Assembly: GCA_965644265.1 (NCBI GenBank)
Contig: OZ286470.1
Coordinates: 9,238,001-9,302,000, forward strand
DNA length: 64,000 bases
Reading direction: 5' to 3'
Origin: Glycera tridactyla
Taxonomy: Eukaryota
Shown: in pieces, positions 7,543-45,547 of the stretch
Position numbering within the stretch: the first letter of the stretch is position 1
How the letters are laid out: each line of letters opens with the position of its first letter
Notes under the pieces: model-generated
Database searches by the model: none
What the model was told of the DNA's origin: nothing
What the model saw: only the letters and a program-made list of their open reading frames with translations
Translations under genes and position numbers: made by a program

Positions 7543-8535
7543 AGTTCTGCTACTATAACATATAGTGTTACTTGACATAAGGATCCTCCAGTGAATGTGG
7601 CATATACTATATCTCAGTTCTGCTACTATAACATATAGTGTTACTTGACATGAGGATCCTCCATTGAATGTGGCATATACTATATCTCAGTTCTGCTACT
7701 ATAACATATAGTATTACTTGACATAAGGATCCTCCAGTGAATGTGGCATATACTATATCTCAGTTCTGCTACTATAACATATAGTGTTACTTGACATAAG
7801 GATCCTCCATTGAATGTGGCATATACTATATCTCAGTTCTGCTACTATAACATATAGTGTTACTTGACATAAGGATCCTCCAGTGAATGTGGCATATACT
7901 ATATCTCAGTTCTGCTACTATAACATATAGTGTTACTTGACATGAGGATCCTCCATTGAATGTGGCATATACTATATCTCAGTTCTGCTACTATAACATA
8001 TAGAATCACTTGCCCTAGGGATCCTTTATGGAGAGTAGCATGGAATGTATCTCATACTAAGAAGTTTTGCTACTATAACATATAGGACTTGAACATGATG
8101 TGTCACTTGCCATGAGGATCCTTCATTGAATATGGCATGGAGTGTATCTCATACTGAGAAGTTTTGCTACTGTAACATGTAGGACTTGAAGATAGAGTGT
8201 TATTTGCCATGAGAATCCTTAAATGAATGTGGCATATTTTGTATCTCATACTGAGTATTTCTGCTAATATAACATATGGGACTAGAACATAGCATGTTAC
8301 TTTGATGAAGATCTTACATTGAATGTGGCATATATTGTATCTCTTACTGAGTAGTTCTATTACTATACCATAAAGGACTAGAACATAGATCGTTACATGC
8401 CATGAGAATCCGTCATTGAATGTGGCATGGGTTGTATCTCATACTGAGTACTTCTGCTACTATAGGGCTAGAACATAGAGTGTCACTTGTCATTGGGATC
8501 ATTCATTGAATGTGGCATATTTTGTATCTTATAGT
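7543..8535. repeat. Minisatellite: six near-identical 73-bp units followed by degenerate 82-97-bp units
   Basis: Unit starts at 7543, 7616, 7689, 7762, 7835 and 7908, then 7981, 8063, 8160, 8257, 8353 and 8450. Confidence 0.95.
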
Positions 8536-13902: not shown

Positions 13903-14358
13903 TGTCCTCTTTCTCTCTCATTCTCTCTCTCTCCCTCTCTCTCTCTATCTCTCATTCATCCTCTCAGTCTCTGTCTCTCTCTGTCTCTCTCTCTGTCTCT
14001 CTATCACTCATTCTCCCTATCACCTTCTCTTGCTCTCTCCTGTTCTCTTCTCTCATTCTTTATCTCTTTATCCCACTCTCTCTTCTCACTCCATGTCCTC
14101 TTCCTCTCTCATTCTCTCTCTCCCTTTCTCTCTATCTCTCATTCGTTCTCTCTGTCTCTCTCTCTCTCATTCATTCTCTCTCTCTATCGCTCATTCTCCC
14201 TATCACCTTCTCTTGCTCTCTCCTGTTCTCTTCTCTCATTCTTTATTTCTTTATCCCACTCTCTCTTCTCACTCCCATTCTACTCTTCTTCTCCCTCTCT
14301 ATCTCTCCCCCTCTATCTCCCTCTTTATTGCTCATTCACCCTTTCACCTTCTCTTGCA

Positions 14359-14405
<47 letters not shown>

Positions 14406-14500
14406 GCTCTATCTCTCTCATTCTTCATTTATTTACCCCACTCTCTTTTCTCACTGCCATTCTACTCTCTTCTCTGTCTCTTCCTCTTCTCTGTCCCTTC

Positions 14501-14533
<33 letters not shown>

Positions 14534-14550
14534 GTCTCTCTCTCTCTTTT
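13903..14550. repeat. CT-rich low-complexity tract with an internal duplication of about 85 bp
   Basis: (CT)n/(CTGT)n; 14006-14092 is repeated at about 14190-14277. Confidence 0.9.
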
Positions 14551-15881
14551 GTTTTGTGTTTTGCACTTCATCTTGGGAATAACCAAGTTTGCATCATATT
14601 CGGTGTCCTCAGACTTGATGAAGTGGGGCCAGAAGAAATGACCTCCCCTACATATTATCTGTCTCGATATAAGAGCTGGTGAATTGTAAGGACAGATTCA
14701 GAGCCAGCCAGTGAGTGGCAGTTTATGCCCCATCTCAGTCATTGTACAATCATCCTCACAGTGCTATCAGCTTCTGACCACGGTTTAAGGTGTACTCTGC
14801 CGCTTATGAAATGACCCAATCATCTGACATGCCTTGATGGCGGTTGGTAGTTTATACGAGGCAGTCGGAGCAGTCTTTGTCAGCCTCCGACTCCAGTTAC
14901 GCCACTGATTAGGTTACCATGGATTCCCGATGTTGTTCGGGCTTGCACCAACAATGACTGGGCCACACCGCCTGATTTTGATATCATGGTCCATTTCACT
15001 GAAACCTACACACAAACTCAAATTTATACTCATTTGCTACAATCAACTTACCAGGTAATTCAACCTACTTTGGAATGCAGATGTGGAATGCAGCCCTGGT
15101 GCTGGCTTTCCCATTAAATCATACTTACTTACTTTGGACCGATTTCTCGAGACATTTCATGACACTCCAACCACTTGTCCAGTGGTGATGCCTATGTTGC
15201 TTCAAACAGAATAGGTCGAATTATATTCATCATGGATTGTCTTGGAACAAAGAACCACATATTTGCAATTATTTGCTATGGTTTTCCAGGAAGAAAATCC
15301 TCTCTTTATTTCAGCAACACCACCCAGGGTCCAAGGATGGGACTCTAGATGTAGGTTATGAGGAACACAAAACTCACAAAATGGGTTGTTTGGTTTGAAT
15401 ATTGTGGCCCCCTTCAGAACATGGCAATGAAATGGTTGGGATCGAGGTCTTATGATACAATCATAGAAAAATTGGGGTCCCCTAGAAAATAAGGAAGAAA
15501 TGATCAAGAAAATGACATTAAAGGAATAAGTACAGTTGGTGCGATGTAGAGGGCCATAGATTTGTCCATTTATAAAGATTTATTTGATCACATGGCCTAA
15601 TACAGGTGGTTTCTGGCCTGTTTTATTGAATTCTATTGCTGTGCTGGTAATTTGCTTGGATCTTGCATCAGCAGGGTGCTTCCAGTTCCTCCCATGGTTT
15701 CTCGTAAGCATCTGCTGTGCACGGGAGAATGTGGATTCTGATCTGAGTGAACTGGTCCCCATCTTGAAATACAATCTGAGAGCTTTCTCTTCTGGTCTAG
15801 AGGAGATAAAACCATGTTTATTGATGTTCTTAGCACTGAATCCTTGTGCAGCAACATACTATTAGCTCCAGCTGTGTAATA

Positions 15882-16058
15882 CAGTCGAACCTGCTCTAAA
15901 GACCACCTCTCTATAAGACCACCTCTCTATAAAGACCACCCTGAGCTGTGACCGAGGTAGTATTTTCAACAGTAAATGACCTCTCTATAAAGACCACCTG
16001 CCTATGAAGACCACTTTTTGATGCGACCGAAGGCAGTCTTCATAGACAGGTTCGACTG
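15882..16058. mobile_element. Tc1/mariner-type MITE (177 bp)
   Basis: TA|CAGTCGAACCTG...CAGGTTCGACTG|TA with internal GACCACCTCTCTATA repeats; near-identical to 39765-39941. Confidence 0.9.
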
Positions 16059-16109
16059 TAGTCTGATGTTATGCTCATGGAACAATCTGGAAGTTGTGAT
16101 GGTTGAATA

Positions 16110-16140
<31 letters not shown>

Positions 16141-16318
16141 GAATGAATGAATGAATGATCAAGATTCATCAATCAAATCATCTGGGAGTCATTCCTGTAT
16201 CTTCTCAGCGGGGCTGTACACTAAGGGTTGCCCTACTGGCACAGGCGAGCAGATTTGGTGTTAGGGCAGGTGATTTTATCAATCTGCCTGCTCAATTGGC
16301 AGGGAACTAAACATTATC

Positions 16319-16943
16319 TGTAACATAGTAAATGTTACCTTTGTGCATTTTGACAAATTTGAAAATCATACCATCCAAATTGGAGACAGGTTCAACTGTA
16401 TCTTGTGTTGAAACATTGAAGGGAGAGAGCTGAGATTGAACACACAAGGATCGGACCACTCTTACTGTTTGTACTGCCAAACTTGAGTAAATACACTCAC
16501 CCCTAGGTTGCCTGCGAAAAGCCCGCCAACCCTGTCCAGGCAGATTTGGCATGGAAACAGTGGTCAAGCTCTCTCACTAGCAATCAACAGAAGGCAGTTG
16601 GGTTCCATATTTCAAAGGAGAAAGACGTACTTGCATTATCAACTCCTTACCCAGCTCATCGGGATTATTACACCTCATATTGCATTACATTCTGTAAAGT
16701 GTTGCAACATCGATCTATCCTCTCCGATAGGCGAACGAGGCTCTACGTTTGATGCTAATCAAATAGTCTATATCTTGTTACTGTTATTAGTTGTACTGAT
16801 ATGATACAAAGCAGGACTCAATTGATACATAGATATAACTATATTCCCCCACATTTGAATATCAAAGGTGTATAGATCCTAGAGTACGTCAAACAACCCC
16901 CATACAGACATTTTGGGACAATTCGACAGTATACTCCTTTACA
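16319..16943 (+). repeat. 5' LTR (625 bp)
   Basis: TGTAACATAG...CTCCTTTACA; matches 23497-24121 except A16450 vs G23628 (by eye; also seen as the S/P difference between the two antisense ORF translations). Confidence 0.97.
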
Positions 16944-16945
16944 TT

Positions 16946-16956
16946 TGGTGGAGAAT
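16946..16956 (+). promoter_or_regulatory. Primer-binding site, tRNA-Ala-type (TGGTGGAGAAT)
   Basis: Begins 2 nt after the 5' LTR; starts with TGG (complement of tRNA CCA); TGGTGGAGAAT is complementary to the 3' end (ATTCTCCA-CCA) of some metazoan tRNA-Ala(AGC) (recalled, not searched). Confidence 0.7.
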
Positions 16957-17081
16957 CGTTGCCTTAACACTACACAGACTTTTATAGTGACATTCCACTG
17001 ACATCCTGTGACATTCTATGGCTTCCTGACGAGGGCGTCATCATTTGGAAGTAGTGGAGTTCAATATCACACCTGCGCGAT

Positions 17082-17230
17082 AGCTACATTATTGGACTTA
17101 TCTGACCAGGATTGACATTGTGGAGTGTGCATTGTTTTCTCCCTACAATTGCAAGCTACAATATTGGACTGAGTTGCTGACCAGGATTGACATTGTGGAG
17201 TGTGCATTCTCTTCTTCCTGCAACTTTGCC
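17082..17230 (+). repeat. Tandem duplication (about 75-bp period) in the LTR-element leader
   Basis: Identical 32-bp core CTGACCAGGATTGACATTGTGGAGTGTGCATT at 17102-17133 and 17177-17208. Confidence 0.85.
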
Positions 17231-17300
17231 TGACATTCGATTCATTCTGTGCCACAAACTCTGCTGTGATCACTGCTGACCTGCACCTCAAGCACCAAAC

Positions 17301-19853
17301 ATGGAAATGAGTGGAAAGCAAGGACAAAATACAGTATGTAAGATAGGTGGATCTTCAGGAGAAATATTTTTGAAGAACATCGGGGATTATGTGAATGAAG
17401 TTGAGAGTGACAGTGTGAATGACAATGATGTTGATGATGGTATTTATGATGATCATGGTGCACATAGAGTTCATTTGCATTGGAGTCCAGATAGAAAACT
17501 CTATAGGGATGCAGAGTATACTGCATCTTCAATACAATATGTGCCACCATCAAACATGAGCACATCAGTCTTATACTCACCACCATTCACCACTCACTCT
17601 CACCATTCATTAGCTCACTCACTTGCACATATGACACAAACATGCACAGTAGATAATCCTTCAAATAGCAGTATATCCCTCAAAGCATGTGTATCACAAG
17701 CAGAGAAGAGTAGCAGTACTTATTCATTCTCTGTATCTACTGCAACCCAATCTTCAGGGACAGGAAGCACCTTGAGGCATACTATGTTAGCATCTGTGCC
17801 AGACATCAGCGCTGCCAATGCAAAATCAGTTCAGGTAGATACTGATGAATTAGAGCCAATCAAACAATATGTTCATGAGTCGGTTGGGACAGATTTAGAT
17901 GCGCTAGAGAAATGCCTGGTGGCAGAAGGGATCACACTAAAGCAATTTCGCAATCTGGAAAATCCTGAGGGGTATGAATTAGCTAAGGACATTCTACTTC
18001 AAGAATGGCTTGAAGCCCATGGTGAACAGCCTGACCAAGCTCGCACCCTTATCAGGGATCTGAGAACTCACAGGTTGAAGGCAACCTCCATGCTAACAAA
18101 ACAGGAAAAACGCCGTTACACTTCAGTGGAGGTGCAAACAGTAAACACAGTGAGGCCAGGGCTCGAATTAAAGACACAGCCTGACTCACCAGCCCAAAGA
18201 CATCTCCCATATCCTGAACCTAAATACTTTGATCAACATGTGGGCTCAGGTGACGTTCAGAAAAGGTTCAATCCTACAGACCACCATTATGTTCACCCCT
18301 CTCAGAGAATCAGGTCAGAGAGCATCTCATCAATTTCTACCTTGAGTTCACTAACATCAGATTGCACAACACCACCTCCACCTTATGCACCTGATTTTGC
18401 TGATGGTACACATGCCATTGTACTGGAGGCACCACAATTGTCAGAGTCTCACAAACAGTTTCTAGGAAGGTCAAAGGGTTCAGCCAAGGGTTTCATATCT
18501 GAACTCAGTTCTGGACAGGCCCAATCTCAGGCTGCCATGATGCCAGAGAGAGCTGCGAGTGCTCTCAGGTTTCAGGGTCAGAGGAGTGGATCACTTACGA
18601 TGTCAAAGGAGGCTGTGAAACCTCATTATGATCCCAAATCAGATGCTGGGGTGTTCACCATGAATGTTTCTGGTGGCCCTACTCAGGAGTTGCCCACATT
18701 TATGCCACATTTGGGTAGCTCACCAGGACAACAGAACAGAAAAGTGCATGCCCCACGCATCAGAATGAGGGATTATAAAGAAGGCCAAAACCCCTCTGGT
18801 TGGATGACATTGTATGAACAATATTGTCATGAGTATGAGATGGATGATGAAACCAAAAAGAACCATCTGGGCTTTCATCTGGAACCAGATTTGCATTCCT
18901 GGTTCCAGAGCCTCCCTTTGAATTCCATGTCATGGGACCAAGTCAGAGAAAAGTTCCTAAGAAACTTTGGAATACCTCAAGCTTCTGAACCCAAATTTCT
19001 CAAACAATTGTATGAGAAAAAACAGGGGGCAATGACTCCTACCAGATGGGGAAATGAGGTCTTATCATCCATCAGGTTACTGCGACAGATGCAGCAGGGG
19101 GAGGAGTTCTCTACAGAAGGTTTCAGGGAACTATACAATATTGTCTTTCAGGGAGCTAGCACTGTAACGCAAAACTATCTGCTGCAGAAAAATCCCACAT
19201 GTCTGACCCAGCTGCAGGATGCTCTGACTGAAGCCACTGCTATGGAGCATAACTCCAACCAGGCAGTTCCAATGGAACAAGTGGAACAAGCCCTCAGGAA
19301 GCTCATGCCAGGGATTGTCACTTCTGTTACAGACCAGAGGAGGCAACACCAGGCAGAGGCACCTACAGACTTGTCATCTGAAATTCAGAAAGCATGTTCC
19401 ATGGAACTCAAGAAAGTGGTTCCAGAAATCATAGCCCCACTTTTGACAAAGAATGATGAAAACTTTTCACAACTGGTTAGGCTAGTAGAAAAGGTGAAAT
19501 GCTACCATTGTGGTGAGGAAGGGCATTGTGTACAAGACTGTCCACACCTAAAACCCCCATTATCAAATTCTGGTGAGGAGAACAGAAAAAATGATCAGAA
19601 ACAAAATGATCAAAATTCAGGCAAATTCAACAAGAGAAATGATTACTTTTGTGATTTCTGCAATATGAAAGGGCACACCATTGAGAGATGCCGTACATAT
19701 GCAGCAGTGCAAAAGGCAACGCAGCCACTGCATCAGCAAATTCAGCATCTACAAAAGCATAGTACAAGTGCCCCTGCACCAGCACCTGCACGGGGTTATG
19801 CTCAGCAGTATAGTGGTTTCATGCCTGGGCAGACTTTTCAGCCTCAACAATAG
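17301..19853 (+). CDS. gag: Retrotransposon Gag, 850 aa: long N-terminal extension, capsid-like domain, two CCHC zinc knuckles
   Basis: Gypsy capsid-like segment (RMRDYKEGQNPSGWMTLYEQYC...LHSWFQSL...SWDQVREKFLRNF, from about 18756); CX2CX4HX4C at 19500-19541 (CYHCGEEGHCVQDC) and 19650-19691 (CDFCNMKGHTIERC); uninterrupted ORF between LTRs. Confidence 0.93.
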   Translation: MEMSGKQGQNTVCKIGGSSGEIFLKNIGDYVNEVESDSVNDNDVDDGIYDDHGAHRVHLHWSPDRKLYRDAEYTASSIQYVPPSNMSTSVLYSPPFTTHSHHSLAHSLAHMTQTCTVDNPSNSSISLKACVSQAEKSSSTYSFSVSTATQSSGTGSTLRHTMLASVPDISAANAKSVQVDTDELEPIKQYVHESVGTDLDALEKCLVAEGITLKQFRNLENPEGYELAKDILLQEWLEAHGEQPDQARTLIRDLRTHRLKATSMLTKQEKRRYTSVEVQTVNTVRPGLELKTQPDSPAQRHLPYPEPKYFDQHVGSGDVQKRFNPTDHHYVHPSQRIRSESISSISTLSSLTSDCTTPPPPYAPDFADGTHAIVLEAPQLSESHKQFLGRSKGSAKGFISELSSGQAQSQAAMMPERAASALRFQGQRSGSLTMSKEAVKPHYDPKSDAGVFTMNVSGGPTQELPTFMPHLGSSPGQQNRKVHAPRIRMRDYKEGQNPSGWMTLYEQYCHEYEMDDETKKNHLGFHLEPDLHSWFQSLPLNSMSWDQVREKFLRNFGIPQASEPKFLKQLYEKKQGAMTPTRWGNEVLSSIRLLRQMQQGEEFSTEGFRELYNIVFQGASTVTQNYLLQKNPTCLTQLQDALTEATAMEHNSNQAVPMEQVEQALRKLMPGIVTSVTDQRRQHQAEAPTDLSSEIQKACSMELKKVVPEIIAPLLTKNDENFSQLVRLVEKVKCYHCGEEGHCVQDCPHLKPPLSNSGEENRKNDQKQNDQNSGKFNKRNDYFCDFCNMKGHTIERCRTYAAVQKATQPLHQQIQHLQKHSTSAPAPAPARGYAQQYSGFMPGQTFQPQQ

Positions 19854-19865
19854 AGGTTAAGGCAC

Positions 19866-21401
19866 ATGGAAACCCCAGCAGCAGCACCAACTTGTTATGA
19901 TATTGCTAGTAATTTTGTTGAAAATGTTCTTGATTCTGTGTATGTATTTGATATGATATCTGACCATGCTAATCCAAATGGTAAATGTGATATTGGTCAA
20001 CACTATCTGAATGTTGGTACTGATGAAAATACTTCAGTTTATTTCTTGGGAAATGGCAATACTCAAAGTATTGATTCTCAAGCCCATGCTGATGCAAATG
20101 TATCACAGGCTGTACATGACTATAGAGATACATATGATTGTTTGCCAAGAGGTATTGATATAGCTGGTATCACACAGTATGATGAAGATGCTGAAATTAT
20201 TGCTTCAACACATATTCCTGTTAATGATAATGCCGGTCGTCAAACTCCTGGGGAGAAAAGTGTCGATTTTAATTATGAACTAGCTCGTATTCGCAAAGAA
20301 TTTCAGGGAGGGTCCTGTACCTGCGACGAGTTAGGCTCAAAACACCCAGTTTCTCATTGCTCACTTATTAGATTTGCTCGCACATTCTTTGCAACCCAGA
20401 ATGCTACAGGTAGCAGGGCTGAGTTGGAAGATAGATCAGCGAGTTATGGAGCACATTTGACTGAGGGTTCAGAGAAAAAGGGCAGGTTCATTAAAAGTGT
20501 TGCGAAGCACCAAGCGTCAGTTGATATCCAGGGAGATTCCTCGAAAAGCAAATTGAAATTATCATCTCATTTGGGTATTATTTCCACATATAAGGGACTT
20601 CGTAGTACCATTCCTATCACCATTGATACAACCTCCATGTGGGCAGTGATTGATACTGGAGCCTCGGTGAATTGCATTTGTCAGTCCATGCTACAAGAAT
20701 TGAAGTGTGAGAGTGATATAGACAAGAATTATTCTCATAATCTCATGGATATTCAGAACAATATGATGCATGTTTTGGGCAGCATCACCCTCACTGTTCA
20801 TGTAGCAGGGAATGGTATATCAGTACCATTCATTGTTGTGCAAAAACTACCCGTCCCTTTAATTTTGGGTAACCAATTTCTGAAGGGAAACTTAGCTATT
20901 ATTGATTTTGGGCCAAAAACCCTCTCATTGCTAGGTGGTAGTGTTATTGTGGCCATGTCACTGATGGAAGACAGTGCCATCACCAAGCATATCAAGGAGG
21001 ATATCATTGTATCACCACAGCCTGATATCATGATTTCATGTGTACCACATGGGATATCAATAGATGCGAAGCAAGGTGACATTCCTGGTAAAACAAAGAT
21101 CAGGGAATCTCAGCCCAAGACTCATGGGACTCCACAACAGGAGTCAGAAGATGAAGCTTCCGGGGATGAGAGATTGTCACCTGAATATGACATGTTTGAT
21201 AAATACAGGCGTGCACAAGCCCAAGCTGAAAAAGCTAAACACTACATTTTGAGGCCTTGTGTCAGGTCACAACCTCCTCTACAAACACAGTCTGCAATAC
21301 AAACATCCTCTAATTATCTTGAGGAACATGCTGATTATGATGGGGATTCAGCAAATGCACCGTCCATCCTGGCTGAGGCCCCACATCACCAGCCTTCATG
21401 A
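19866..21401 (+). CDS. pro: Retropepsin-type aspartic protease ORF, 511 aa, in frame with gag; no RT/RH/IN
   Basis: WAVIDTGASVNCI with catalytic DTG at 20652-20660 and LILGNQFL (ILG motif, about 20859-20882). Same frame as gag (both starts are 0 mod 3). Ends in a low-complexity acidic/Gln tail and TGA TGA. Confidence 0.88.
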   Translation: METPAAAPTCYDIASNFVENVLDSVYVFDMISDHANPNGKCDIGQHYLNVGTDENTSVYFLGNGNTQSIDSQAHADANVSQAVHDYRDTYDCLPRGIDIAGITQYDEDAEIIASTHIPVNDNAGRQTPGEKSVDFNYELARIRKEFQGGSCTCDELGSKHPVSHCSLIRFARTFFATQNATGSRAELEDRSASYGAHLTEGSEKKGRFIKSVAKHQASVDIQGDSSKSKLKLSSHLGIISTYKGLRSTIPITIDTTSMWAVIDTGASVNCICQSMLQELKCESDIDKNYSHNLMDIQNNMMHVLGSITLTVHVAGNGISVPFIVVQKLPVPLILGNQFLKGNLAIIDFGPKTLSLLGGSVIVAMSLMEDSAITKHIKEDIIVSPQPDIMISCVPHGISIDAKQGDIPGKTKIRESQPKTHGTPQQESEDEASGDERLSPEYDMFDKYRRAQAQAEKAKHYILRPCVRSQPPLQTQSAIQTSSNYLEEHADYDGDSANAPSILAEAPHHQPS

Positions 21402-23479
21402 TGAGATACTTATCCAACTTTTGACATAATTTGTATGGGTGTCAGTTCCACTTACATCAATTTCACTTGTAACAGGCTATGGGTTTGCTATTCCTGTATC
21501 AAACAATGATGCATTATACACAGCCCTGCAAACAAGAAATACTGTGTTTGGAATTCCATATGATACCAGCCACTGAGATCACATCAAAGTAATGATTTGT
21601 CTATTGTCTATTGCATTGCTCTTACACAGATTCCATACACTGCATGCAACAATTCATTATACAAGATATGTAACCCCCATAGTCAAAGGTTGTTCATTGG
21701 ATAATTAGACACAACAAATTGAATTTCCAGTGAATACAGGCAAGCTCATCGGATATGGAGCAAGATTAGAAAATCTCTCACTATTTTCATAAGCCAAGCA
21801 GAAAATTGACATTCCATTAGCTGCACTAATGGTTGGTAGTAGAAATATTGTATACTACGTAGGTAGTGATATAACATATATTGTTGATTGATTGATTGAT
21901 ATGTTGTTGAATTTAATGTTACAGAATTTTGCTGCTGCATAGGGATACAAGGGGTTCTATGTGCCGTACTTTGTGTTTATTCTGATGAATTTTGATTATA
22001 TTTGTGTTTTATGTAGAAATGATTGATGCTATCAGAAAATATTCAGATCTTGTGTATGCAACTCATGATCTGAGTATTGGAAAGCATTGTATGAAAAAGT
22101 CATTTTGTCTCTTGAAAGTTTTCAGGCAACTTTCATTTTATCTGTCATAGCAGTTGGTACTCTAGAGAGCCACTTATGTGATAGCAGGGGAGCAAACATG
22201 CTTTCTGGACATGTACACTGTAATCATAGTTACATGTTTTATGAAAAGGACATGTACTGATGTACAGTCTGATTACAAAGAATGCACTTTTCAAACAAAG
22301 GTATGTACATTGGTAACTATAGGTTTTGTTGCCTCATGCCATTAATGATTACACTGCATCCATAACCCTCTTACTACCACCTTGAATTATGCTGATAAAT
22401 GTCATAGTGACATACATGCCATACACAAACATAATAATACGCATATCTACATGCATGCACACTTACACACTTAATATATACATACATATATATACAGTAT
22501 CTTCACATTGTTACATATTTACAGTGGTGTATATTGATATGTTTGATTTATGAGTTGTCCATCTCATCATGAGTTTAATGTTATTGTAAATGATGCTGAT
22601 GAATGATCCTTTAGTCATGAGGAAAATCTTCCTCAAGAACTTTGTTCTTGGAAATTACATGTCCTGTTGGTATAGAAAACAGGATGAACACAGATAATTC
22701 CAGCCTTGTGCTCTTGACTATCTCAGAATCAGTGAATTGAGAGTCGAATATGTTGTATAGTGGCATTACTGGACTGTTTGCGGCCACCTAATCAATGTGG
22801 TCAGCAGCCCCTTAATCAACTCATGTTGACTGTTTAAACAAACAGATCACACCAAACAGTGGTGTACCTATACTCACAGGTATTGTGTCAATACCACTCG
22901 CAACCTTCACTTGAGCACAAAAGAGTCAGTGATTTGTGATATTGCAATTGTGAATTATACTTCATCCATATAGCATATAATAGTATCAGATTGATTCACA
23001 GAATATCTTGCTGATCATTTAGAGGTATCAAATGACATATTCTTTATACAACTGTTATGTGATGTATCTATATATTGGGATATGATATCAATATCATTTG
23101 ATGTATGTATCTGTAATCATTATGATGAGTCTGATCATTCACATCTGTTATGATTATCAGTATTTATACATTATGACACTTTTATTGCTCACTTCATTTG
23201 CTTATTTCTGTAATAAAGAAATAGCTTAGGCTTGGAGCTGATGTCAAATTCCCAGAGGTTTAGATGTGCTCCATGGTGTCCCAATGCACTCCTCAGTGTA
23301 GACTGCAGGGGCAGTCTATTCTGAAAAAGGAGGGGGGTATTTTTGCACCAGGGACAATGATGTGGAACATACTTCACTGAATATGCAATATGAGGGAATC
23401 TATTCAATATTTTTTGCAATTGCAAAACTCCCACTAAAATAACTTGATACCCTAAGAATTTGATCGAGGGACCGATCTT

Positions 23480-23496
23480 GAGAAAGTAGGGGCGAA
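23480..23496 (+). promoter_or_regulatory. Polypurine tract (PPT)
   Basis: GAGAAAGTAGGGGCGAA directly abuts the TG of the 3' LTR. Confidence 0.85.
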
Positions 23497-24121
23497 TGTA
23501 ACATAGTAAATGTTACCTTTGTGCATTTTGACAAATTTGAAAATCATACCATCCAAATTGGAGACAGGTTCAACTGTATCTTGTGTTGAAACATTGAAGG
23601 GAGAGAGCTGAGATTGAACACACAAGGGTCGGACCACTCTTACTGTTTGTACTGCCAAACTTGAGTAAATACACTCACCCCTAGGTTGCCTGCGAAAAGC
23701 CCGCCAACCCTGTCCAGGCAGATTTGGCATGGAAACAGTGGTCAAGCTCTCTCACTAGCAATCAACAGAAGGCAGTTGGGTTCCATATTTCAAAGGAGAA
23801 AGACGTACTTGCATTATCAACTCCTTACCCAGCTCATCGGGATTATTACACCTCATATTGCATTACATTCTGTAAAGTGTTGCAACATCGATCTATCCTC
23901 TCCGATAGGCGAACGAGGCTCTACGTTTGATGCTAATCAAATAGTCTATATCTTGTTACTGTTATTAGTTGTACTGATATGATACAAAGCAGGACTCAAT
24001 TGATACATAGATATAACTATATTCCCCCACATTTGAATATCAAAGGTGTATAGATCCTAGAGTACGTCAAACAACCCCCATACAGACATTTTGGGACAAT
24101 TCGACAGTATACTCCTTTACA
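23497..24121 (+). repeat. 3' LTR (625 bp)
   Basis: Direct repeat of 16319-16943, preceded by a purine tract and followed by the TSD TATC. Confidence 0.97.
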
Positions 24122-24858
24122 TATCCATGCAATGATTATATGCGGGAGGTCAGGTGAAAATGACAGGAAGGGCAGGTAGAAATCACACTCCACTTGCTTG
24201 AGGAGCAGCTGAAGAAAAAAGTCAATGTAGAGCCCTGCTTATTTATATGACATGATTTTCGGAATTGGTAATAGTTGCCAGATATGTATGATTGTTTGTT
24301 GCTCAGCTGAGTCATATGATTTTGAAGGAATCTTTCCCGCCAATTCCACATCCTCAGAAATCTCGAGATTGCAATACAAGGGTTAAAGAGTGAACCCTGC
24401 TGGGTTTTTATCAGAAGGGTTCATTGCATGCATGCATGTGCGCATCGCACACACGCATGCATGCTCACACACAACCACAAACAGACACTGACTCATGCAA
24501 GGTAGAAAATCATACTCCAGGAAGAAAAAATAAAATTCACAAGTTTCCCTGGATGCTGTATATTTTGCATTCAGCATCGCTGCCGGGTTGGAAGCCTATA
24601 GATGCAAGCACGATCATCCCTTTCATCCTGTGACAGGAATGTGCAAAGTCTGTGTGAGCTACAAACATAAATAGCTAGAAACACCAGTAGTTGCTTTATT
24701 TGTCTATCCAGCTGGCATTCATGGGGTTCCACATTGTCTAGCACAGTTGACATGTTTGTGTGCTCAACCTAGCACAATTGTCATCAGATGCTCACATTAT
24801 CATTATATCTGTCCATCTGAACCAGAAATAATAACAGCTAACTCAACCTACCACAACT

Positions 24859-26268
24859 CAGCGATGTTTTTGGCCCAAAAATTGAGCGGGCCAATGGCCC
24901 GCTCAGCAGAAAAACAGTGGGCCATTTTCAGGATTCAATGGGCCATTTCGGAATACTTCGAGCCATTTCCAGGTTCGTGAAAACAACTGTTTTTCACAAT
25001 ATGACACACCCACTACCAACCACCATGCACACACACATACGCACATAGAGGAATGGCATCAAAATTATCCACCTGCCTGGTTAGCAGTTACATTTTCAGA
25101 TCTACCTGCCTCTTCAAAATTCAGGATGCCTCCATTATGTGTTCATTAAATTTATCATTTTCCACCTGTCCACTGAGCAGGTAGGTTTCGAAATAATTCT
25201 GTCAACCTTTGAAATCTACCTGCAATGGCCAGTCGGGAGGCCATCTCAAGCACACACATGGACCCCATTTGCTCATCCCAGGTTTACCAACCCCCCCCCC
25301 CCCCCATCAGGCAAGGGTGAACCAGAACTGTCTCTTGATGTTGTGGAATTATTCCAGTCATCAGCCGGTAGGGGGTCATTAAGAAGGATGCAGCGTATTG
25401 CCAGTGCACAGCCAGACTGCGCAGCTATACTGGGGTTCAAAGGTCAGTGAGGGTAGCCTAGATGCCATAAAACTCATTATATATCCATCAACCGCCCCCA
25501 ATGATAGATAACACCTGTTGTCAACTAATAAGACACAGTGTCTTCAGGATCTTTTCTTGCCCTGGAGTTGGATAATCAGGTATACAATGTCTTGTGGACA
25601 ATTCATTTGAACCATGACCCCTGATTTTTTCGATTTTTTCTGAAAGATAACTTCATAGCGAAACCCACCATGTAAATTTAAACTCTTAGAGTTGGGTTTT
25701 TCCAAGTGTTATACAGAGATATATGCATGAAAATTGTGTGATTTCTCAACAGTGGTTTTGATTAGGCAACAAATTTTCACTAAAAAATCATATGTTCCTG
25801 GATCCACTGATCACCATGTCCAAGGAATGAGCCTTTTCAACCATCACAGAAAACTGAGACAAAAAGTGTCAAAAATCAAGAGATTTATAAAGAAAGAACA
25901 AATCTCACTTTGTCAAATTTTGCCATCGGATCATATGGCCATAACTTGTAAAAAACAACCATGACATATCATTTTTCTTCCATTTTCCAACACTACATAT
26001 GATAATTGTGAAGCACACAAAAAATTAGGATCGAGAGTTGGTTTTTTCTTATTCGATGCAACCTCCTTAATAGGGAATACTTTCTTTGACCCTGTAGAAT
26101 GACCCCCCCCCCCCCCCCCCCAACAAACGTTGTCTGAGTATAGTCACTGTTAGTTTATTGACAAAATTACTGCCGCGCCCAAGAGGGCCCATGGAGCTAT
26201 TTGTTAGTGCGCCCATATCATTATGTAAGACGCCAATGGCGCGATGGCGCTGCAAATAAACTTCACTG
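24859..26268 (+). mobile_element. Non-autonomous DNA transposon with 6-bp TSD (copy 1, carries a nested element)
   Basis: Ends CAGCGATG...CTTCACTG; ACAACT duplicated at 24853-24858 and 26269-26274; colinear with the reverse complement of 44826-45547. Confidence 0.85.
25383..26066. mobile_element. Kolobok-like non-autonomous element (TTAA TSD, RR termini), 684 bp
   Basis: TTAA at 25379-25382 and 26067-26070; imperfect TIR GAAGGATGCA / GGAGGTTGCA; empty site is a single TTAA at 45022-45025 in the sister copy. Purine-purine ends argue against piggyBac, which starts CC. Confidence 0.7.
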
Positions 26269-26658
26269 ACAACTGTCATCAAATGCTAGCGTTCACATTA
26301 TATCTGTCCATACTAGAACCTGAAATAATGACTGCTAACTCAACCTACCACAACTGTCTTCAAATGCTAACATTCACATTATATCTGTCCATACTAGAAC
26401 CTGAAATAATAACTGCTAACTCAGCCTACCACAACCGTCATCAAATGCTAGCGTTCACATTATATCTGTCCATACTAGAACCTGAAATAATAACTGCTAA
26501 CTCAGCCTACCACAACTGTCATCAGATGCTCACATTATCATTATATCTGTCCGTACTAGAACCTAAAATAATAACTGCTAACTCAACTTACCACAACTGT
26601 CATCAAATGCTAACATTCACATTATATCTGTTCATACTAGAACCAGAAATAATAACTG
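26269..26658. repeat. 81-bp minisatellite (about 4.8 units), with a first unit at about 24775-24858
   Basis: Unit starts at 26271, 26352, 26433, 26514 and 26595; the upstream monomer is separated by the 6-bp-TSD transposon. Confidence 0.93.
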
Positions 26659-30700: not shown

Positions 30701-30897
30701 NNNNNNNNNNNNNNNNNNNNNNNNNNNNNNNNNNNNNNNNNNNNNNNNNNNNNNNNNNNNNNNNNNNNNNNNNNNNNNNNNNNNNNNNNNNNNNNNNNNN
30801 NNNNNNNNNNNNNNNNNNNNNNNNNNNNNNNNNNNNNNNNNNNNNNNNNNNNNNNNNNNNNNNNNNNNNNNNNNNNNNNNNNNNNNNNNNNNNNNNN
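30701..30897. other. Assembly gap (N run)
   Basis: 197 N. Confidence 1.
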
Positions 30898-31699: not shown

Positions 31700-33361
31700 A
31701 TGAGTCCCGGAGAATGCAAATTCAACCATTTGCGCCATATGACATATTTTAACGTATAGCCGATTATGCGTAAGACGTATTTTTAAGTACAGCCGATTAT
31801 GCATACGACGTATATTGTCATATAGCTGATTATGCATGCGATGCATCATGACGTATTAAGACATAGCGCAAAAAATCGCGATTGAGAAAAAGTAAATACT
31901 ATTTCCCGGCGATTCCAACAAGAAATGATGACGCAGCTGGAGGAAGCCGGCATCAACATCCACCGCAAAGAATTGTGGGTGTCTAGACTCCGAGGAGAAC
32001 CAAAACCAGCGAATGGCACTTCAGGGATATTTCTTATCAAAATTTGTGACGGAAGACGAGAAGGATTCATCTTGTTTTTATGCTACCCAACCGAAGGTAG
32101 GGGGGGCATACTGGATTCACTCTGTCCGTCTGTCTGTCTGTCCGTCTGTCCGTCTGTCCGTCTGTCCGTCTGTTAACAATTTATTGTGGCACCTGGTGTG
32201 TCCAAGCTATTGATGCGAGAGTTTCCATTTTTGGTATGTGGATTACCCATGAGGGGTAGATGTGCATGGGCATGTTATGTCGCCCCTACGACCTTTGACC
32301 TTTGGCCAGTGACCTTGACCTTGGAAATTGTCATGAAATCTTGTGGCGCCTAGTGTGTCCAAGCTATTGATGCGAGAGTTTCCATTTTTGCTATGTGAAT
32401 TACCCATGAGGGGTAGGTGTGCATGGGCTTGTGAATTTGGCCCTACAACCTTTGACCTCGGGCCAGTGACCTTGACCTTGGAAATTGTTATGGAATTCTG
32501 CGGCACCTGGTGTGTCCATGCTATTGATGGGAGAGTTTTCATTTTTGGTATATCAGTTACCCATTAGGGGTAGGTGTGCATGAGCATGTTATTTTGCCCC
32601 TATGACCTTTGACCTTGGGCCAGTGACCTTGACCTTGGAAATTGCCATGAAATCTTGTGTCACTCATTGTATCCAAGCTATTGATGCGAGAGCTTCCATT
32701 TTTGGTATGTGGATTACCCAAGAGCGGTAGGTGTACATGAGCATGTCATTCTGTCCCTGTGACCTTGGAGATATGACCTTGAATAAGATGGCGGGGGGGG
32801 GGCATTAGTATATCCTCTGGATTACAGTTCTAGTTCACTCACTTTCTGCTCGTGACGCAAAATTTTCACCTCGCCATTACGAAAAAAAATACGATATTGA
32901 ATCAAACTGTTTGCGGCATATTCTGCGCAATATTCTTAGGATTTGTTTGAAATATGGTTTCTTCAGATATCACTTGTATTCATCGTGTGGTATGATCGCA
33001 AAGGCGACAAGATCGTATTTTTTCAGCGACTTGTTCATTTTTTCCCACGTTTCACCCTATGTTTGGCGGATCGCGAATGCTGTTTACCCTTGTACGATTG
33101 GAAATCCGAGATGATCATCGTCTTCAGCATCTTCCAATCTACTATGGCAAATTTTTTGATAAGTTTCTGACCATTATTAAAAGTCTGGGGCACCTCTGAA
33201 GAAGCGCTAATTTCTTGATGTTCTTTCGTGACTTGTATGTGAATGCATGCAAGTGACAGCTGTCACGTCATGGCACACTAGATGCTAGCGAAGGCTCGCT
33301 CATGACGCGTTTTGACACCAAATAGTCACAAGGTCATGGCTTTTATGACGCAAAGGGTTAA
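31700..33361. mobile_element. Possible piggyBac-like remnant interrupted by the Helentron-like element
   Basis: CpG-rich block ending GCAAAGGG|TTAA (CCC terminus + TTAA) at 33361; internal three-copy repeat of about 33 bp at 31745-31845; matching left terminus not found. Confidence 0.3.
32077..32833 (+). mobile_element. Helentron-associated non-autonomous element (HINE/DINE-like) with internal 157-bp satellite
   Basis: 5' ATGCTACCC...GGGGGGCAT, (CTGT/CCGT)n microsatellite, 157-bp units starting at 32185, 32342, 32499 and 32656 with GACCTTTGACCT motifs, 3' GGGGGGCATTAG, inserted in a TT context. Confidence 0.75.
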
Positions 33362-38470: not shown

Positions 38471-39764
38471 ATGTAAACGCATCTCCATCAGATGGTACAG
38501 GTGACACATGAGAAACGGTACTCATTAGTTAGTTTATTGATTTTCCATATGCAATGATCAAGTAGGTGTATACAATACCAACATCTACATTAGATACAAC
38601 TCTAGTATCAGAATTTGATCAAGAGGTATAATTGTATATATATACATTGCTTTACAACTGACAGTAATATTACAGATATATCATGTCTCAGGAGTAGAAC
38701 CACACCTCAGCATTGGACTGCATGTAATATTGCATGTGATCAAGGCCACTTGTAGAGTGGTCGAAACATTGTGAAATTGTCTTCAAAGTGAAGGTACTTT
38801 TGATCATTTTAGCTGATGTCACCTAATAAAAGTCCGTCATTGTCTTCATGTTAGGATGAAAACTTATGGTACTCACAGTTGATCGACAAAATTTGAAGTT
38901 TCTGGATTCTCTTGTTAGCGATTTTCCTACAATAAAACTGAGGTACATTACTTAAATGTGGAGAAATTTTGAATTTGTTATTATGTTTGACTGCTCAAGG
39001 AACCTGAAATCATTATCATGCAGTTCCAAATATTTCCCATCGACATCATAATATGAGGTGTATTGTGACGCGCAATGAGTTTGCATCAACTTCTTTCCAA
39101 TCTCTGCTAATTGGCTGTGGCAGATTTCATTGTGATTGACAGGTGGTAGTTGTAATTTGGCATTTCCATGTTGTTGAGCCGGACTCCTGCATCTGTTGAT
39201 TGACCTCTTGTCTTCTCAGGAGTCAATGTTCACACCTCCAGTACTGCTTCCTCTTTGCTCATCATCTTACTACTATTCTTCCTTCTCTCTGCTCCTCCTC
39301 TTTCTCTTCTTCTTCCTCTCTACTCTTCATTTTTCCTCTTCTTCTTCCCCTCTGCTCTTCATCTTTCTATTCTTACTCCTCTTCCCTCTCTTCCTCAGGG
39401 ACCCATTGAGTAAGTGAGAATTTCATGAATTTTCTCCCCCAGAAAGCGGAGTTTTGAATAATCCCAGCCAGGCTCATAACATGGGTGTCACAATATATAG
39501 CTCAAATGGAGCTGACATGTGACATTAAACCAGAACCAACCATCCATCCAAGCCTCCTTCCTGCTGCTTCTGCTGCTCCTGCTCCCCTACTCTTGCTCCT
39601 CCTATTCTATTGCACCATCTCACCGCTCTGCTAAGGTTCACTTTCCCGACTCAATGTCACCTTGAGTAGGTGTGAATTTCATGAATTGTCTCCTGTTTGG
39701 GGACTCAGAGAGGAAAGTCTTGAATTATCCCCCACCCCATATCCATAGCATGGGCATCAAAATA

Positions 39765-39941
39765 CAGTCGAACCTGCTCTAAAGACCACCTCTCTATAGA
39801 GACCACCTCTCTATAAAGACCACCTGAGCTGTGACCGTGGCAGTATCTTCAACAGTAAATGACCCTTCTATAAAGACCACCTGCCTATAAAGACCGCTTT
39901 TTGATGCGACCGAAGGCGGTTTTTATAGACAGGTTCGACTG
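39765..39941. mobile_element. Tc1/mariner-type MITE (177 bp)
   Basis: Same 12-bp perfect TIR and TA TSD as 15882-16058. Confidence 0.9.
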
Positions 39942-41657
39942 TATAGCATAAATGGAGCTAATATGGTGTTAAACCAGAACCAACCAACCATCCAACCCCC
40001 TCTCCCTGCTGCTGCTGCTGCTGCTGCTGCTCCTCTTCCTCCTCCTGCTCCTTCTCCCCTGCTCCTGTTCCTCCTATTGCCTCTCTACTCTATTGGATCA
40101 TCTTTCCTCTCTGCAAAGGTCCAATTTCATTAAAAAATACAGTTATTGCAATTGGAAATGGCACAAAACTCATGATTGCAGTGGTTTCCATGGTAGCTGA
40201 GAATGCTTGCGCCATATCAAGAGCACAGACATCTTAGTGAGATGTACCCGGATCTCAATAGACCAACAGGCTCCAAGTTTTTCAACCCAATAATTTAACT
40301 GCCTAATTATCTTCACTCCAAATCAACTCAGTTGACATTTATCACTAGTAAGAGAGAGAAAATGCTTCGCACCAACTAATCTTCTGTTAATAAGTTTATT
40401 CTGTGCAAAAGCTTCTCAAAAAGAGAGGTAGTAGTTTTGACAAAATCTTTCGGATTGTGTGGAATTCCTTCTTTCATCCTCTATCCTACACAGTTTGTCC
40501 TGGCAACTCATACTGGGATAGAAATGTCTGTAGTGGAGAGAACATCCAGCTTTCATTAACCAAGAACACACGGCATACACAACCCTGGGGATGATACATG
40601 CCATTGAACCTAAAAAAAAAGGCAACTCTTACTGGGCAGGAGGCATCATCTTTCGGTCATAATCACATCGCCTGTGCTGCTCAGAAGTAGCTGTCACATT
40701 GTCCAGAGAAAAGAGAGAGGCCCACACCTGAGAACCTGTTGGTACTGTGCAAAGGGCAGTTGGGGATGAGTATCCAAGATGAATACACTGATACCACCAA
40801 ACATGATCAAACATAAGTGAAAAAGATGATACCACACTCATCCAGCGCAACACCAGCAGGGCCATGGACAGCCAAGGCAAAGCCTGTCCAAATTTGCCTT
40901 GGCTGTTGATGACCCTGCTGGTGTTGTTGTGCAGAATGCATGTAGTATTATATTTTCTACTTATTATCAAAACATTGAAAAACAATGGAACAATGGAACA
41001 ACTTTTGTGACCTTGGTAACCGATTGTTTGCTGCTCAGAAAAGTGTTGAAACTTCAGTTGAAATTGAATTTCCTATTGAGAAGTATGTCTTGGGTATTGA
41101 CTTTCTCTTTTTGGAAATAGATAATAATGTTCCATATTTTGTAATTGGAAACAATATATTTTATGTGAGTATAGAATTCTTCAATGACCATTTCATTCAT
41201 GACTTGTTTTTGAGATTTATTCTGGGATATTGACTTGTTATTTTTGAAGAGGAATGCTCCATATTTTGTTATTGGAAACAGTATATTTTATGGGAGTAGA
41301 ACTCTTCGATGATCATTTCATTCATGATTATGTTCTGAGACGGATGTGGTGCAGAGTAGTGGAAGGGTTTGAGACGGGTGTTGTGGCATCAGTCAGTCTG
41401 AGGGGTTATCTAAACAAGGACTATTTACCTGTGTATATTTATGTCCAAGCAATTCTCCCTGCATTATACCATTAGATCACATCAGTCTCTCGGCATCTCA
41501 CTACCAGCAAACACCAGCTGTTCACACACTCCCCCTGCTCATGTCTGGGAGAAACCCGTGTGTCTGCCATTTCACCACGAGCCGACCGAGCTAACCGTAT
41601 TCTTTCATGGGTTTGCACATCTCCAGGAACTTTTCCTGACTGGTAGAGAATATATAG

Positions 41658-41792
41658 NNNNNNNNNNNNNNNNNNNNNNNNNNNNNNNNNNNNNNNNNNN
41701 NNNNNNNNNNNNNNNNNNNNNNNNNNNNNNNNNNNNNNNNNNNNNNNNNNNNNNNNNNNNNNNNNNNNNNNNNNNNNNNNNNNNNNNNNNNN
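41658..41792. other. Assembly gap (N run)
   Basis: 135 N. Confidence 1.
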
Positions 41793-45346: not shown

Positions 45347-45380
<34 letters not shown>

Positions 45381-45547
45381 TGTGTGTGCGTGGTTGGTAG
45401 TGGGTGTGTCATAAACAGTTGTTTTCACGAACCTGGAAATGGCTCACGAAATTTCGAAAATGGCCCATTGAATCCTGAAAATGGCCCATTGTTTTCCTGC
45501 TGAGCGGGCCATTGGCCCGCTCAATTTTCGGGCTGGAAACATCACTG
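44826..45547 (-). mobile_element. Non-autonomous DNA transposon with 6-bp TSD (copy 2, 722 bp)
   Basis: Ends CAGTGAAG...CATCACTG; CATAAT duplicated at 44820-44825 and 45548-45553; subterminal palindrome GAGCGGGCCA-N-TGGCCCGCTC shared with copy 1. Confidence 0.88.

What the first reader, a model, noticed from the sequence alone, without database searches (positions are those of the whole stretch)
16319..24121. Young, full-length LTR element encoding only capsid and protease, with pol replaced by 2.1 kb of non-coding DNA
Seen: all cis signals are intact (near-identical LTRs, 4-bp TSD, PBS, PPT), and the gag and protease ORFs are uninterrupted. After the stop at 21401 there is no RT (YxDD), RNase H or integrase (HHCC/DDE) signature, and no plus-strand ORF of 60 aa or more up to the PPT. 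Known: non-autonomous LTR elements usually lose all coding capacity (TRIM/LARD) or keep gag alone (plant TR-GAG). Inference: this may be a semi-autonomous lineage that builds and matures its own particle but borrows RT and IN from a helper. One LTR mismatch in 625 bp suggests it transposed recently, possibly already in this pol-less form.
Basis: partly seen in the sequence, partly recalled or inferred. Interest (0 to 1): 0.8.

Follow-up and report, generated by a model that had tools for sequence, protein, structure and literature searches.

The report
Pol-less LTR retrotransposon keeping Gag and protease
This is a very young copy of a Ty3/gypsy-type jumping gene that still encodes its shell protein and protease but has lost reverse transcriptase and integrase, so it must borrow them; the layout is real, but it is already known from wheat and only one copy could be examined.

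Summary
The window carries a complete 7.8-kb LTR element at 16319-24121. It has two 625-bp LTRs with one mismatch, TG..CA ends, a 4-bp TATC target duplication, a primer-binding site and a polypurine tract.

ORF1 (850 aa) is a Gag. Its capsid fold is supported by an AlphaFold model that matches dArc, PNMA2, Ty3 and Copia capsids, and it has two CCHC knuckles. ORF2 (511 aa) carries an intact retropepsin.

New here: ORF1 and ORF2 share one reading frame, split by a single UAG. That UAG and its context (CAA-UAG-purine) recur in four independent distant relatives, which points to programmed read-through giving Gag and Gag-Pro.

Those relatives share about 25% protein identity with this element and the same 11-nt primer-binding site. 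They are autonomous Ty3/gypsy elements with PR-RT-RNaseH-IN.

Homology to their Pol stops near ORF2 residue 393. No RT, RNase H or integrase trace exists in the 2.1-kb AT-rich tail or anywhere else in the window.

The claim of a mobile semi-autonomous lineage could not be tested, because no sibling copy exists in any reachable collection. Gag-Pro-only "semi-autonomous" LTR elements are already described in wheat (RLG_Sabrina_SA, RLG_WHAM). I rate this a new member of a known kind, of moderate-to-low interest.

The parts
16315..16318 (+). Target-site duplication, left copy (TATC)
   Evidence: Read directly; identical to 24122-24125.
16319..16943 (+). 5' LTR, 625 bp, TG...CA ends
   Evidence: Matches the 3' LTR at 624 of 625 positions. 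The single mismatch is at 16450.
16946..16963 (+). Primer-binding site. It starts TGG, 2 nt after the LTR. The first 11 nt are the conserved core.
   Evidence: The 11-nt core is invariant in L001/L006, L003 and L004, always upstream of gag. The partner tRNA was not identified.
17082..17223 (+). 75-bp tandem duplication (1.9 copies) in the 355-nt leader
17301..19853 (+). ORF1 = Gag, 850 aa. It has a roughly 480-aa N-terminal extension with no recognisable domain, then capsid, then nucleocapsid.
   Evidence: Residues 460-797 are homologous to the Gag of autonomous relatives: L001 E=6e-31, L004 E=4e-27, L003 E=2e-14.
18765..19250 (+). Capsid (CA) domain, ORF1 residues about 489-650
   Evidence: The AlphaFold2 model from the 5-sequence alignment A4 has pLDDT 79-94 in the 10-residue blocks of this stretch. 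The top 15 Foldseek PDB hits are all retroelement capsids or capsid-derived proteins: dArc1/2, PNMA2, Ty3, Copia, Arc. Probability reaches 1.00 and TM-score 0.62.
19500..19541 (+). First CCHC zinc knuckle (C734-C747)
   Evidence: Pfam zf-CCHC. It matches the Copia VLP protein and HIV NC.
19650..19691 (+). Second CCHC zinc knuckle (C784-C797)
   Evidence: Read from the translation. The Cys and His positions are conserved in L001, L003 and L004.
19851..19853 (+). In-frame UAG between Gag and Pro; candidate programmed read-through site
   Evidence: ORF1 and ORF2 share a frame. The same CAA-UAG-purine context, followed by an in-frame downstream ORF, occurs in L001, L003, L004 and L005.
19854..21401 (+). 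ORF2 = Pro. It is open from the codon after the UAG; the first ATG is at 19866 (511 aa).
20610..20945 (+). Retropepsin core, ORF2 residues about 249-360, with the DTGAS active-site motif at 20652-20666
   Evidence: Pfam gag-asp_proteas E=7e-7, above the curated cut-off. There were 239 homologues, the best at E=4e-18. The catalytic D263-x-G265-A266 and the L334-G335 motif are invariant in A3. Of the 34 columns up to residue 393 that are invariant among the four relatives, 26 are kept in the window protein and 8 are changed.
21045..21398 (+). C-terminal 118 codons of ORF2 with no similarity to relatives' Pol; the likely deletion junction lies at or near its start
   Evidence: Alignment A3: relatives continue into a conserved post-protease domain and the RT N-terminus, and the window protein does not. 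GC is 46%. The chance of staying open with tail-like composition is about 7e-4.
21402..23479 (+). 2.1-kb AT-rich non-coding tail
   Evidence: GC is 35%, and stops make up 4-7% of codons in each of the six frames, about 6% on average. There are no Pfam hits, no Pol remnants, no similarity to relatives and no other copy in the window.
23480..23496 (+). Polypurine tract abutting the 3' LTR
   Evidence: Read directly.
23497..24121 (+). 3' LTR, 625 bp
24122..24125 (+). Target-site duplication, right copy (TATC)

Best explanation
The element is a non-autonomous derivative of a Ty3/gypsy-type (Metaviridae-like) LTR retrotransposon.

**Shown**
- It has complete cis signals for reverse transcription and integration.
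- It has an open gag with a capsid fold and two zinc knuckles.
- It has an open protease gene in the same frame, behind a single UAG.
- It has no RT, RNase H or integrase.

**Inferred**
- The LTR promoter drives a full-length RNA.
- Ribosomes mostly stop at the UAG and make Gag. Occasional read-through makes Gag-Pro.
- The protease matures particles built from the element's own Gag.
- RT and integrase come in trans from an autonomous clade member elsewhere in the genome. That helper would use the same primer tRNA, because the 11-nt primer-binding site is conserved across the clade.
- The copy seen here was most likely inserted in its pol-less form. It arose from an internal deletion that starts just after the protease core.

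**Open**
- Whether it belongs to a persistent 'semi-autonomous' lineage or is a one-off defective copy.
For: - **Structure:**
- **Gag:** homology to the Gag of pol-bearing relatives. The 5-sequence alignment has 20 invariant columns. The model and capsid fold matches are; the zinc knuckles.
- **Protease:**
- **Nearest relatives:** they are PR-RT-RNaseH-IN polyproteins preceded by a long Gag.
- **Read-through:** the same frame and the same CAA-UAG-purine context occur in five elements whose proteins are only 19-26% identical over the aligned Gag and protease regions.
- **Shared primer-binding site:**
- **No pol:**
- **Youth:** one LTR mismatch.
- **Tail:** it is compositionally distinct, and the break falls exactly at the ORF2 stop.
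- **Precedent for the lifestyle:** PMC9744471.
Against: - Only one copy is available. No sibling and no helper was found, so trans-mobilisation and lineage status are untested.
- ORF intactness carries no weight for selection at this age.
- No significant RNA structure lies downstream of the UAG (z=+1.6). Read-through therefore rests on comparative conservation only.
- The window's codons after the UAG differ from the relatives' (AGG UUA against GAC AGG).
- The window's Gag and Pro are the most divergent of the clade. They keep only 20 of 45 capsid columns that are invariant among the other four.
Confidence: 0.6

Rival explanations
1. It is a one-off defective copy. The pol deletion arose by template switching during the very reverse-transcription event that produced this insertion, from an autonomous parent. 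The copy is a dead end, and its open gag-pro merely reflects its youth.
For: No sibling was found anywhere. The expected post-insertion change is only about 0.08% per site, so intact ORFs are uninformative. Internal deletions are the commonest defect of retroelements (general knowledge). The tail may be the parent's own 3' untranslated region. Relative L004 has over 6 kb per unit without long ORFs.
Against: The 118 codons after the homology break stay open and have coding-like GC (chance about 7e-4). This fits a junction that has been translated for some time, or an in-frame join to another coding part, better than a random break. The absence of siblings reflects missing genome data, not a negative search of the genome.
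Confidence: 0.3
2. A full-length element inserted, and pol was lost afterwards by genomic deletion or replacement, or by an assembly error.
For: This cannot be excluded from a single assembled copy. The window does contain assembly gaps elsewhere (30701-30897 and 41658-41792).
Against: There are no N runs inside the element. Both LTRs, the target duplication, the primer-binding site and the PPT are intact. The event would need a 5-kb loss, and possibly a 2-kb gain, within the time of one LTR substitution. The compositional break coincides with a stop codon rather than cutting an ORF.
Confidence: 0.07
3. It is a domesticated host gene pair (an Arc/PNMA/SASPase-like Gag and protease) rather than a transposon.
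For: The capsid model matches Arc and PNMA2. The protease's best solved relative is the skin protease ASPRV1.
Against: Near-identical LTRs, a target duplication, a primer-binding site and a PPT show a recent insertion, not an old conserved gene. No orthologue exists among about 15 billion proteins.
Confidence: 0.02

Closest known systems
RLG_Sabrina_SA and RLG_WHAM, 'semi-autonomous' Gypsy retrotransposons of wheat and barley (Wicker et al. 2021, PMC9744471)
   Same: They are full-length LTR elements of 8.1-8.3 kb with an intact GAG-protease ORF and no RT or integrase. They are thought to contribute structural proteins and to be mobilised by an autonomous partner.
   Different: Those are plant families, with thousands of copies and population-level evidence. 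Here there is one copy in an unidentified host. Sequence relatedness was not tested. The wheat elements are described as one GAG-Pro ORF, whereas here a conserved in-frame UAG separates Gag from Pro.
RLG_Quinta / RLG_Cereba partner pair (PMC11302176) and plant TR-GAG elements
   Same: The non-autonomous element keeps gag, has lost RT and IN, and shares its primer-binding site, PPT and LTR ends with an autonomous partner.
   Different: Quinta and TR-GAG keep gag only. This element also keeps a protease with its catalytic motifs intact (DTGAS, L334-G335). No partner has been identified here.
Autonomous long-Gag Ty3/gypsy elements found here: L001/L006, L003, L005 (ENA metagenome contigs) and L004 (NCBI GCA_013332675.1)
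   Same: Their Gag is 747-930 aa, with a long variable N-terminus, a homologous capsid and two knuckles. They have an in-frame CAA-UAG-purine gag stop, a homologous protease and the identical 11-nt primer-binding-site core.
   Different: They continue into a clade-specific post-protease domain, then RT, RNase H and integrase, giving a Pol of about 2000 aa. The window element stops matching after the protease. Protein identity is only 19-26%, so none of them is the direct parent or helper.
Gammaretrovirus gag-pol expression (MLV-type UAG read-through)
   Same: An in-frame UAG lies between gag and the downstream enzymatic ORF.
   Different: MLV needs a downstream pseudoknot (general knowledge). 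No significant fold was found here. The element is not a retrovirus and has no env.
LARD / TRIM non-coding LTR elements
   Same: They are non-autonomous and have a long non-coding internal stretch.
   Different: LARD and TRIM encode nothing. This element devotes 4.1 kb to open Gag and Pro frames.

Membership tests
LTR retrotransposon (structural definition) | Two direct long terminal repeats with TG...CA ends, flanked by a short target-site duplication | tested here: met
   625-bp LTRs matching at 624/625, TGTAAC...TTTACA ends, TATC on both sides.
LTR retrotransposon (structural definition) | tRNA primer-binding site next to the 5' LTR and a polypurine tract next to the 3' LTR | tested here: met
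   A TGG-initiated site lies 2 nt after the LTR, and its 11-nt core is invariant in four independent relatives. A purine tract lies at 23480-23496. The cognate tRNA was not identified; there is no tRNA gene in the window.
Ty3/gypsy (Metaviridae) superfamily | Pol domain order PR-RT-RNaseH-IN and RT phylogeny | not testable with these tools
   The element has no RT or IN. By proxy, every pol-bearing protein checked among its protease relatives has PR-RT-RNaseH-IN order, and the Gag homologues sit upstream of such Pols.
Ty3/gypsy (Metaviridae) superfamily | Gag with a two-lobed retroelement capsid fold and CCHC nucleocapsid | tested here: met
   The model has mean pLDDT 76. Its best matches are dArc1/2, PNMA2, Ty3 and Copia capsids. 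There are two CX2CX4HX4C knuckles.
Semi-autonomous Gag-Pro LTR retrotransposons (Sabrina_SA/WHAM type) | Intact gag and protease coding capacity | tested here: met
   Open frames of 850 and 511 aa. The protease's catalytic D-x-G-A and L-G motifs are retained, and 26 of the 34 columns up to residue 393 that are invariant among the four relatives are kept.
Semi-autonomous Gag-Pro LTR retrotransposons (Sabrina_SA/WHAM type) | RT, RNase H and integrase absent | tested here: met
   No Pfam match in the tail. tblastn with 22 Pol proteins finds nothing below E=0.15.
Semi-autonomous Gag-Pro LTR retrotransposons (Sabrina_SA/WHAM type) | Multiple copies with the same pol-less structure at different sites (a replicating population) | not testable with these tools
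There is no other copy in the window, no close protein among about 15 billion, and no DNA or protein match in metagenome or viral contigs.
Semi-autonomous Gag-Pro LTR retrotransposons (Sabrina_SA/WHAM type) | An autonomous partner in the same genome sharing LTR ends, primer-binding site and PPT | not testable with these tools
   No pol lies anywhere in the 64 kb. Only distant clade members, from other sources, share the primer-binding site.
TR-GAG / LARD / TRIM | Gag only (TR-GAG) or no coding capacity (LARD, TRIM) | tested here: not met
   A protease domain is present above Pfam's cut-off. There are 4.1 kb of open frames.
Programmed stop-codon read-through (MLV-like) | In-frame leaky stop between gag and the enzymatic ORF, conserved among relatives | tested here: met
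   The same frame and the same CAA-UAG-purine context occur in five elements.
Programmed stop-codon read-through (MLV-like) | Stimulatory downstream RNA structure | tested here: inconclusive
   The fold of 19845-19960 is no more stable than shuffled sequence (z=+1.6). Pseudoknots are not modelled by this tool.

The most novel reading that the evidence does not exclude
The copy belongs to an established, actively transposing semi-autonomous lineage. In this reading, Gag and a read-through Gag-Pro are kept by selection while RT and IN are borrowed. The lineage would sit in a host and a Ty3/gypsy clade far from the Triticeae cases. The clade's traits are a long Gag, a UAG read-through and a shared primer-binding site. 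Its Gag is missed by Pfam, and this element has no relative above 38% identity among about 15 billion proteins. That would make gag-pro retention a recurrent, convergent strategy of LTR-element parasitism, not a cereal oddity.
Probability: 0.3. Interest if true: 0.5.

Novelty: new member of a known kind. Interest (0 to 1): 0.33.

Why it matters
If the pol-less form proves to be a replicating lineage, it would be an independent second example of "semi-autonomous" LTR retrotransposons, after the wheat families Sabrina_SA and WHAM. These elements make and mature their own particles while taking the polymerase and integrase from a helper. That bears on how parasite-of-parasite relations evolve among mobile elements, and on which functions must be supplied in cis.

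The comparative result is a small but solid side product for annotating this poorly covered Ty3/gypsy clade. Across the clade, the in-frame UAG with its fixed context and the 11-nt primer-binding site are both conserved.

As it stands, with one copy and no genome-wide data, this is an ordinary defective-element architecture with a known precedent.

Tried and rejected
**Word-index protein searches (all three used, all empty)**
- Whole ORF1: the search words came from the non-conserved N-terminus.
- ORF1 residues 470-850.
- The Gag C-terminal alignment A2: my error. The 391-aa first row set a length window of 215-684 aa, which excludes the 747-930-aa Gags.

**Searches for siblings (all empty)**
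- Exact look-up of ORF1 and ORF2.
- The search for related loci with ORF2 in viral and metagenome contigs.
- An exact 23-nt LTR pattern in metagenome and viral contigs.

**Capsid identification**
- The single-sequence AlphaFold model of the capsid region was unusable (pLDDT 43). The 5-sequence alignment fixed this.
- A profile search of PDB sequences with A2 found only zinc-knuckle matches.

**RNA and tail**
- Rfam at gathering threshold: no family in the window.
- The RNA fold downstream of the UAG showed no significant structure.
- Nucleotide and translated comparison of the tail with relatives' loci found nothing.
- The ORF2 C-terminus has no similarity to any part of relatives' Pol, including the region after the integrase. 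An in-frame join to the Pol C-terminus is therefore neither shown nor excluded.

**Context of relatives and host**
- I tried to delimit the LTR of relative L004, to measure its native 3' untranslated region. Several candidate PPTs gave no decision.
- I tried to name the host through other ORFs of the window, assembly accessions in the literature and cluster names. None gave a name.
- A literature search for the primer-binding-site string returned only unrelated primers.
- From memory only, the complement of the primer-binding site resembles the 3' end of an alanine tRNA. This was not verified.

**Handling notes**
- No contig looked human.

Full report
- Two 625-bp direct repeats lie at 16319-16943 and 23497-24121. 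They differ at one position, 16450 A versus 23628 G.
- They begin TGTAAC and end TTTACA.
- TATC flanks both sides, at 16315-16318 and 24122-24125.
- Two bases after the 5' LTR comes a TGG-initiated primer-binding site.
- A purine run at 23480-23496 abuts the 3' LTR.
- Inside are two long open frames: 17301-19853 (850 aa) and 19866-21401 (511 aa). They are the only ORFs above 260 aa in the 64-kb window.
- No other copy of the element or its LTR is present in the window. The two N runs (30701-30897, 41658-41792) lie outside the element and were left alone.

**2. What the two ORFs are.**

Pfam finds only a zinc knuckle in ORF1, plus a sub-threshold Retrotrans_gag hit (E=0.057). In ORF2 it finds a retropepsin domain at residues 250-340, above the curated cut-off.

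I scored ORF2 against 1.84 billion cluster representatives. This gave 239 hits, all confined to residues about 190-410, at 23-41% identity (38% at most among the strongest hits). Every pol-bearing protein checked among the best hits has the Ty3/gypsy domain order PR-RT-RNaseH-IN.

Fetching their contigs showed that the closest ones belong to one clade:
- L001 and L006, which are the same element
- L003
- L004
- L005

In this clade a 747-930-aa ORF with CCHC knuckles lies directly upstream of Pol. ORF1 residues 460-797 align to these upstream ORFs, with pairwise E=6e-31, 4e-27 and 2e-14. The 5-sequence alignment has 20 invariant positions.

An AlphaFold2 model built on that alignment has pLDDT 79-94 in each 10-residue block over about 160 residues. 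The top 15 Foldseek matches among solved structures are all retroelement capsids or capsid-derived proteins: dArc1, dArc2, PNMA2, Ty3, Copia and Arc. PEG10, MOAP1 and HIV CA follow further down the list. Probability reaches 1.00 and TM-score 0.62. The viral library weakly agrees.

So ORF1 is a Gag. It has a long N-terminal extension that is variable across the clade, a two-lobed capsid, and a nucleocapsid with two CX2CX4HX4C knuckles. ORF2 is a protease ORF. Its catalytic D263-x-G265-A266 and its L334-G335 motif are invariant in the alignment with four relatives. Up to residue 393 it keeps 26 of the 34 columns that are invariant among those relatives.

**3.

ORF1 and ORF2 are in the same frame. 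They are separated only by the UAG at 19851-19853 and four sense codons.

In L001, L003, L004 and L005 the gag stop is also an in-frame UAG. It is preceded by CAA and followed by a purine, and the downstream frame stays open. These elements share only about a quarter of their Gag and protease residues. A conserved stop with a conserved context is therefore best read as programmed read-through. The products here would be Gag and Gag-Pro.

No stable local RNA structure was found downstream. The mechanism rests on comparative evidence alone.

**4. Is pol really gone?** Yes.
- In alignment A3 the relatives continue after the protease into a clade-specific domain. They then pass through a strongly conserved stretch into the RT fingers.
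- The window protein stops matching at about residue 393 (window ~21045). It keeps none of the later invariant columns.
- Its last 118 codons resemble no part of the relatives' Pol.
- The ten longest stop-to-stop pieces of 21402-23496 have no Pfam match at E<=1.
- tblastn with 22 Pol proteins gives only chance-level hits in the tail (best E=0.15). Across the whole window these proteins hit only the protease.
- The tail has 35% GC, no strand asymmetry, and stops at 4-7% of codons in each of the six frames. The coding part has 40-49% GC and an A-rich sense strand. The switch falls at the ORF2 stop.

**5. How it most likely works.**

Shown:
- complete cis signals
- Gag, and protease behind a conserved UAG
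- no polymerase or integrase
- a very recent insertion

Inferred:
- The element makes its own particle proteins, and the protease matures them.
- RT and IN come from an autonomous relative.

One cis-level argument supports trans-mobilisation. The first 11 nt of the primer-binding site are identical in the window and in L001/L006, L003 and L004, always just upstream of gag. A helper of this clade would therefore use the same primer tRNA.

The insertion was probably made in pol-less form. One LTR mismatch corresponds to about 0.08% change per copy. That is far too little for pol to decay without trace. A post-insertion loss of 5 kb that leaves a stop-terminated frame and intact ends is less parsimonious.

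**6. What remains open.**

Nothing here shows a lineage.
- The exact proteins are absent from the 15-billion-protein collection.
- No representative exceeds 38% identity over a substantial match.
- Protein-pattern and exact-DNA scans of metagenome and viral contigs were empty.

At this age about three substitutions are expected in 4.1 kb, so open frames say nothing about selection.

The one hint of a longer history is the 118-codon extension beyond the homology break. It stays open (chance about 7e-4 with tail-like composition) and has coding-like GC.

The tail may be acquired sequence, or it may be the parent's own 3' untranslated region. Relative L004 was assembled as a 15,077-bp circle, and over 6 kb of it has no ORF of 100 aa or more. 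I could not place its LTR boundaries.

**7. Comparison with what is known.**

That is out of date.
- Wicker et al. 2021 describe RLG_Sabrina_SA, with an intact GAG-Pro ORF, explicitly called "semi-autonomous". They also describe RLG_WHAM, with GAG and proteinase only and no RT or INT. Both are found in wheat (PMC9744471).
- The Quinta/Cereba pair is a further gag-retaining case, with a shared primer-binding site, PPT and LTR ends (PMC11302176).

The window element meets the two architectural criteria of this kind. The two population criteria, many copies and an identified partner, could not be tested.

It is not a TR-GAG, LARD or TRIM element.

The host is unidentified. Other ORFs of the window gave no family match. 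The relatives come from unnamed metagenome contigs and one unnamed NCBI assembly.

**8. Verdict.**

This is a new member of a known kind. Interest is moderate to low until a genome-wide copy census is done.

No contig looked human.

Noticed in passing
window 19845-19865; L001 3256-3276; L003 about 2505-2531; L004 4256-4276; L005 1172-1192: The gag stop is an in-frame UAG with a conserved CAA-UAG-purine context, followed by an in-frame downstream ORF, in all five clade members. Their protein identity is only about 25%. This is a likely programmed read-through signal for this Ty3/gypsy clade.
   Followed up: partly
window 16946-16956; L001 981-991; L006 1949-1959; L003 60-70; L004 1523-1533: An 11-nt primer-binding-site core (TGGTGGAGAAT) is invariant across the clade. 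In the relatives it lies 26-73 nt upstream of the gag ATG; in the window it lies 355 nt upstream. The cognate tRNA was not identified.
   Followed up: partly
window 17082-17223: There is a 75-bp tandem duplication (1.9 copies, 87% matches) inside the element's unusually long leader. The relatives' leaders are far shorter.
   Followed up: no
L004 1-111 and 15078-15188: The ends of the contig of the autonomous relative (NCBI GCA_013332675.1, JAAUYI010001767.1) are identical. The element was probably assembled as a 15,077-bp circle through collapsed LTRs. Over 6 kb of the unit has no ORF of 100 aa or more.
   Followed up: partly
window 15876-16063, 39761-39943, 43802-43996 (-), 46072-46219 (-): A short interspersed repeat of about 185 bp occurs four times at 75-93% identity. 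Two of these copies (at 15897 and 39780) contain a 16-17-bp tandem motif. One copy lies about 250 bp upstream of the LTR element.
   Followed up: no
window 24859-25389 and 45015-45547 (inverted), with 26067-26269 and 44825-45025: An inverted pair of a repeat of about 560 bp (81% identity) is present, and neighbouring pieces also match. This is another dispersed repeat family, one copy just downstream of the element.
   Followed up: no
window 7543-8533; 26269-26658; 32184-32766; 49200-49595; 52677-52999; 13905-14547: There are several minisatellite arrays, with periods of 73/97, 81, 157, 16 and 40 bp, plus a CT-rich low-complexity block. These account for most of the other long 'ORFs' in the window.
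   Followed up: no
window 1-64000: No tRNA gene, no Rfam family at gathering threshold, and no Pfam match in ten other long open stretches. The host organism could not be named from this window.
   Followed up: partly
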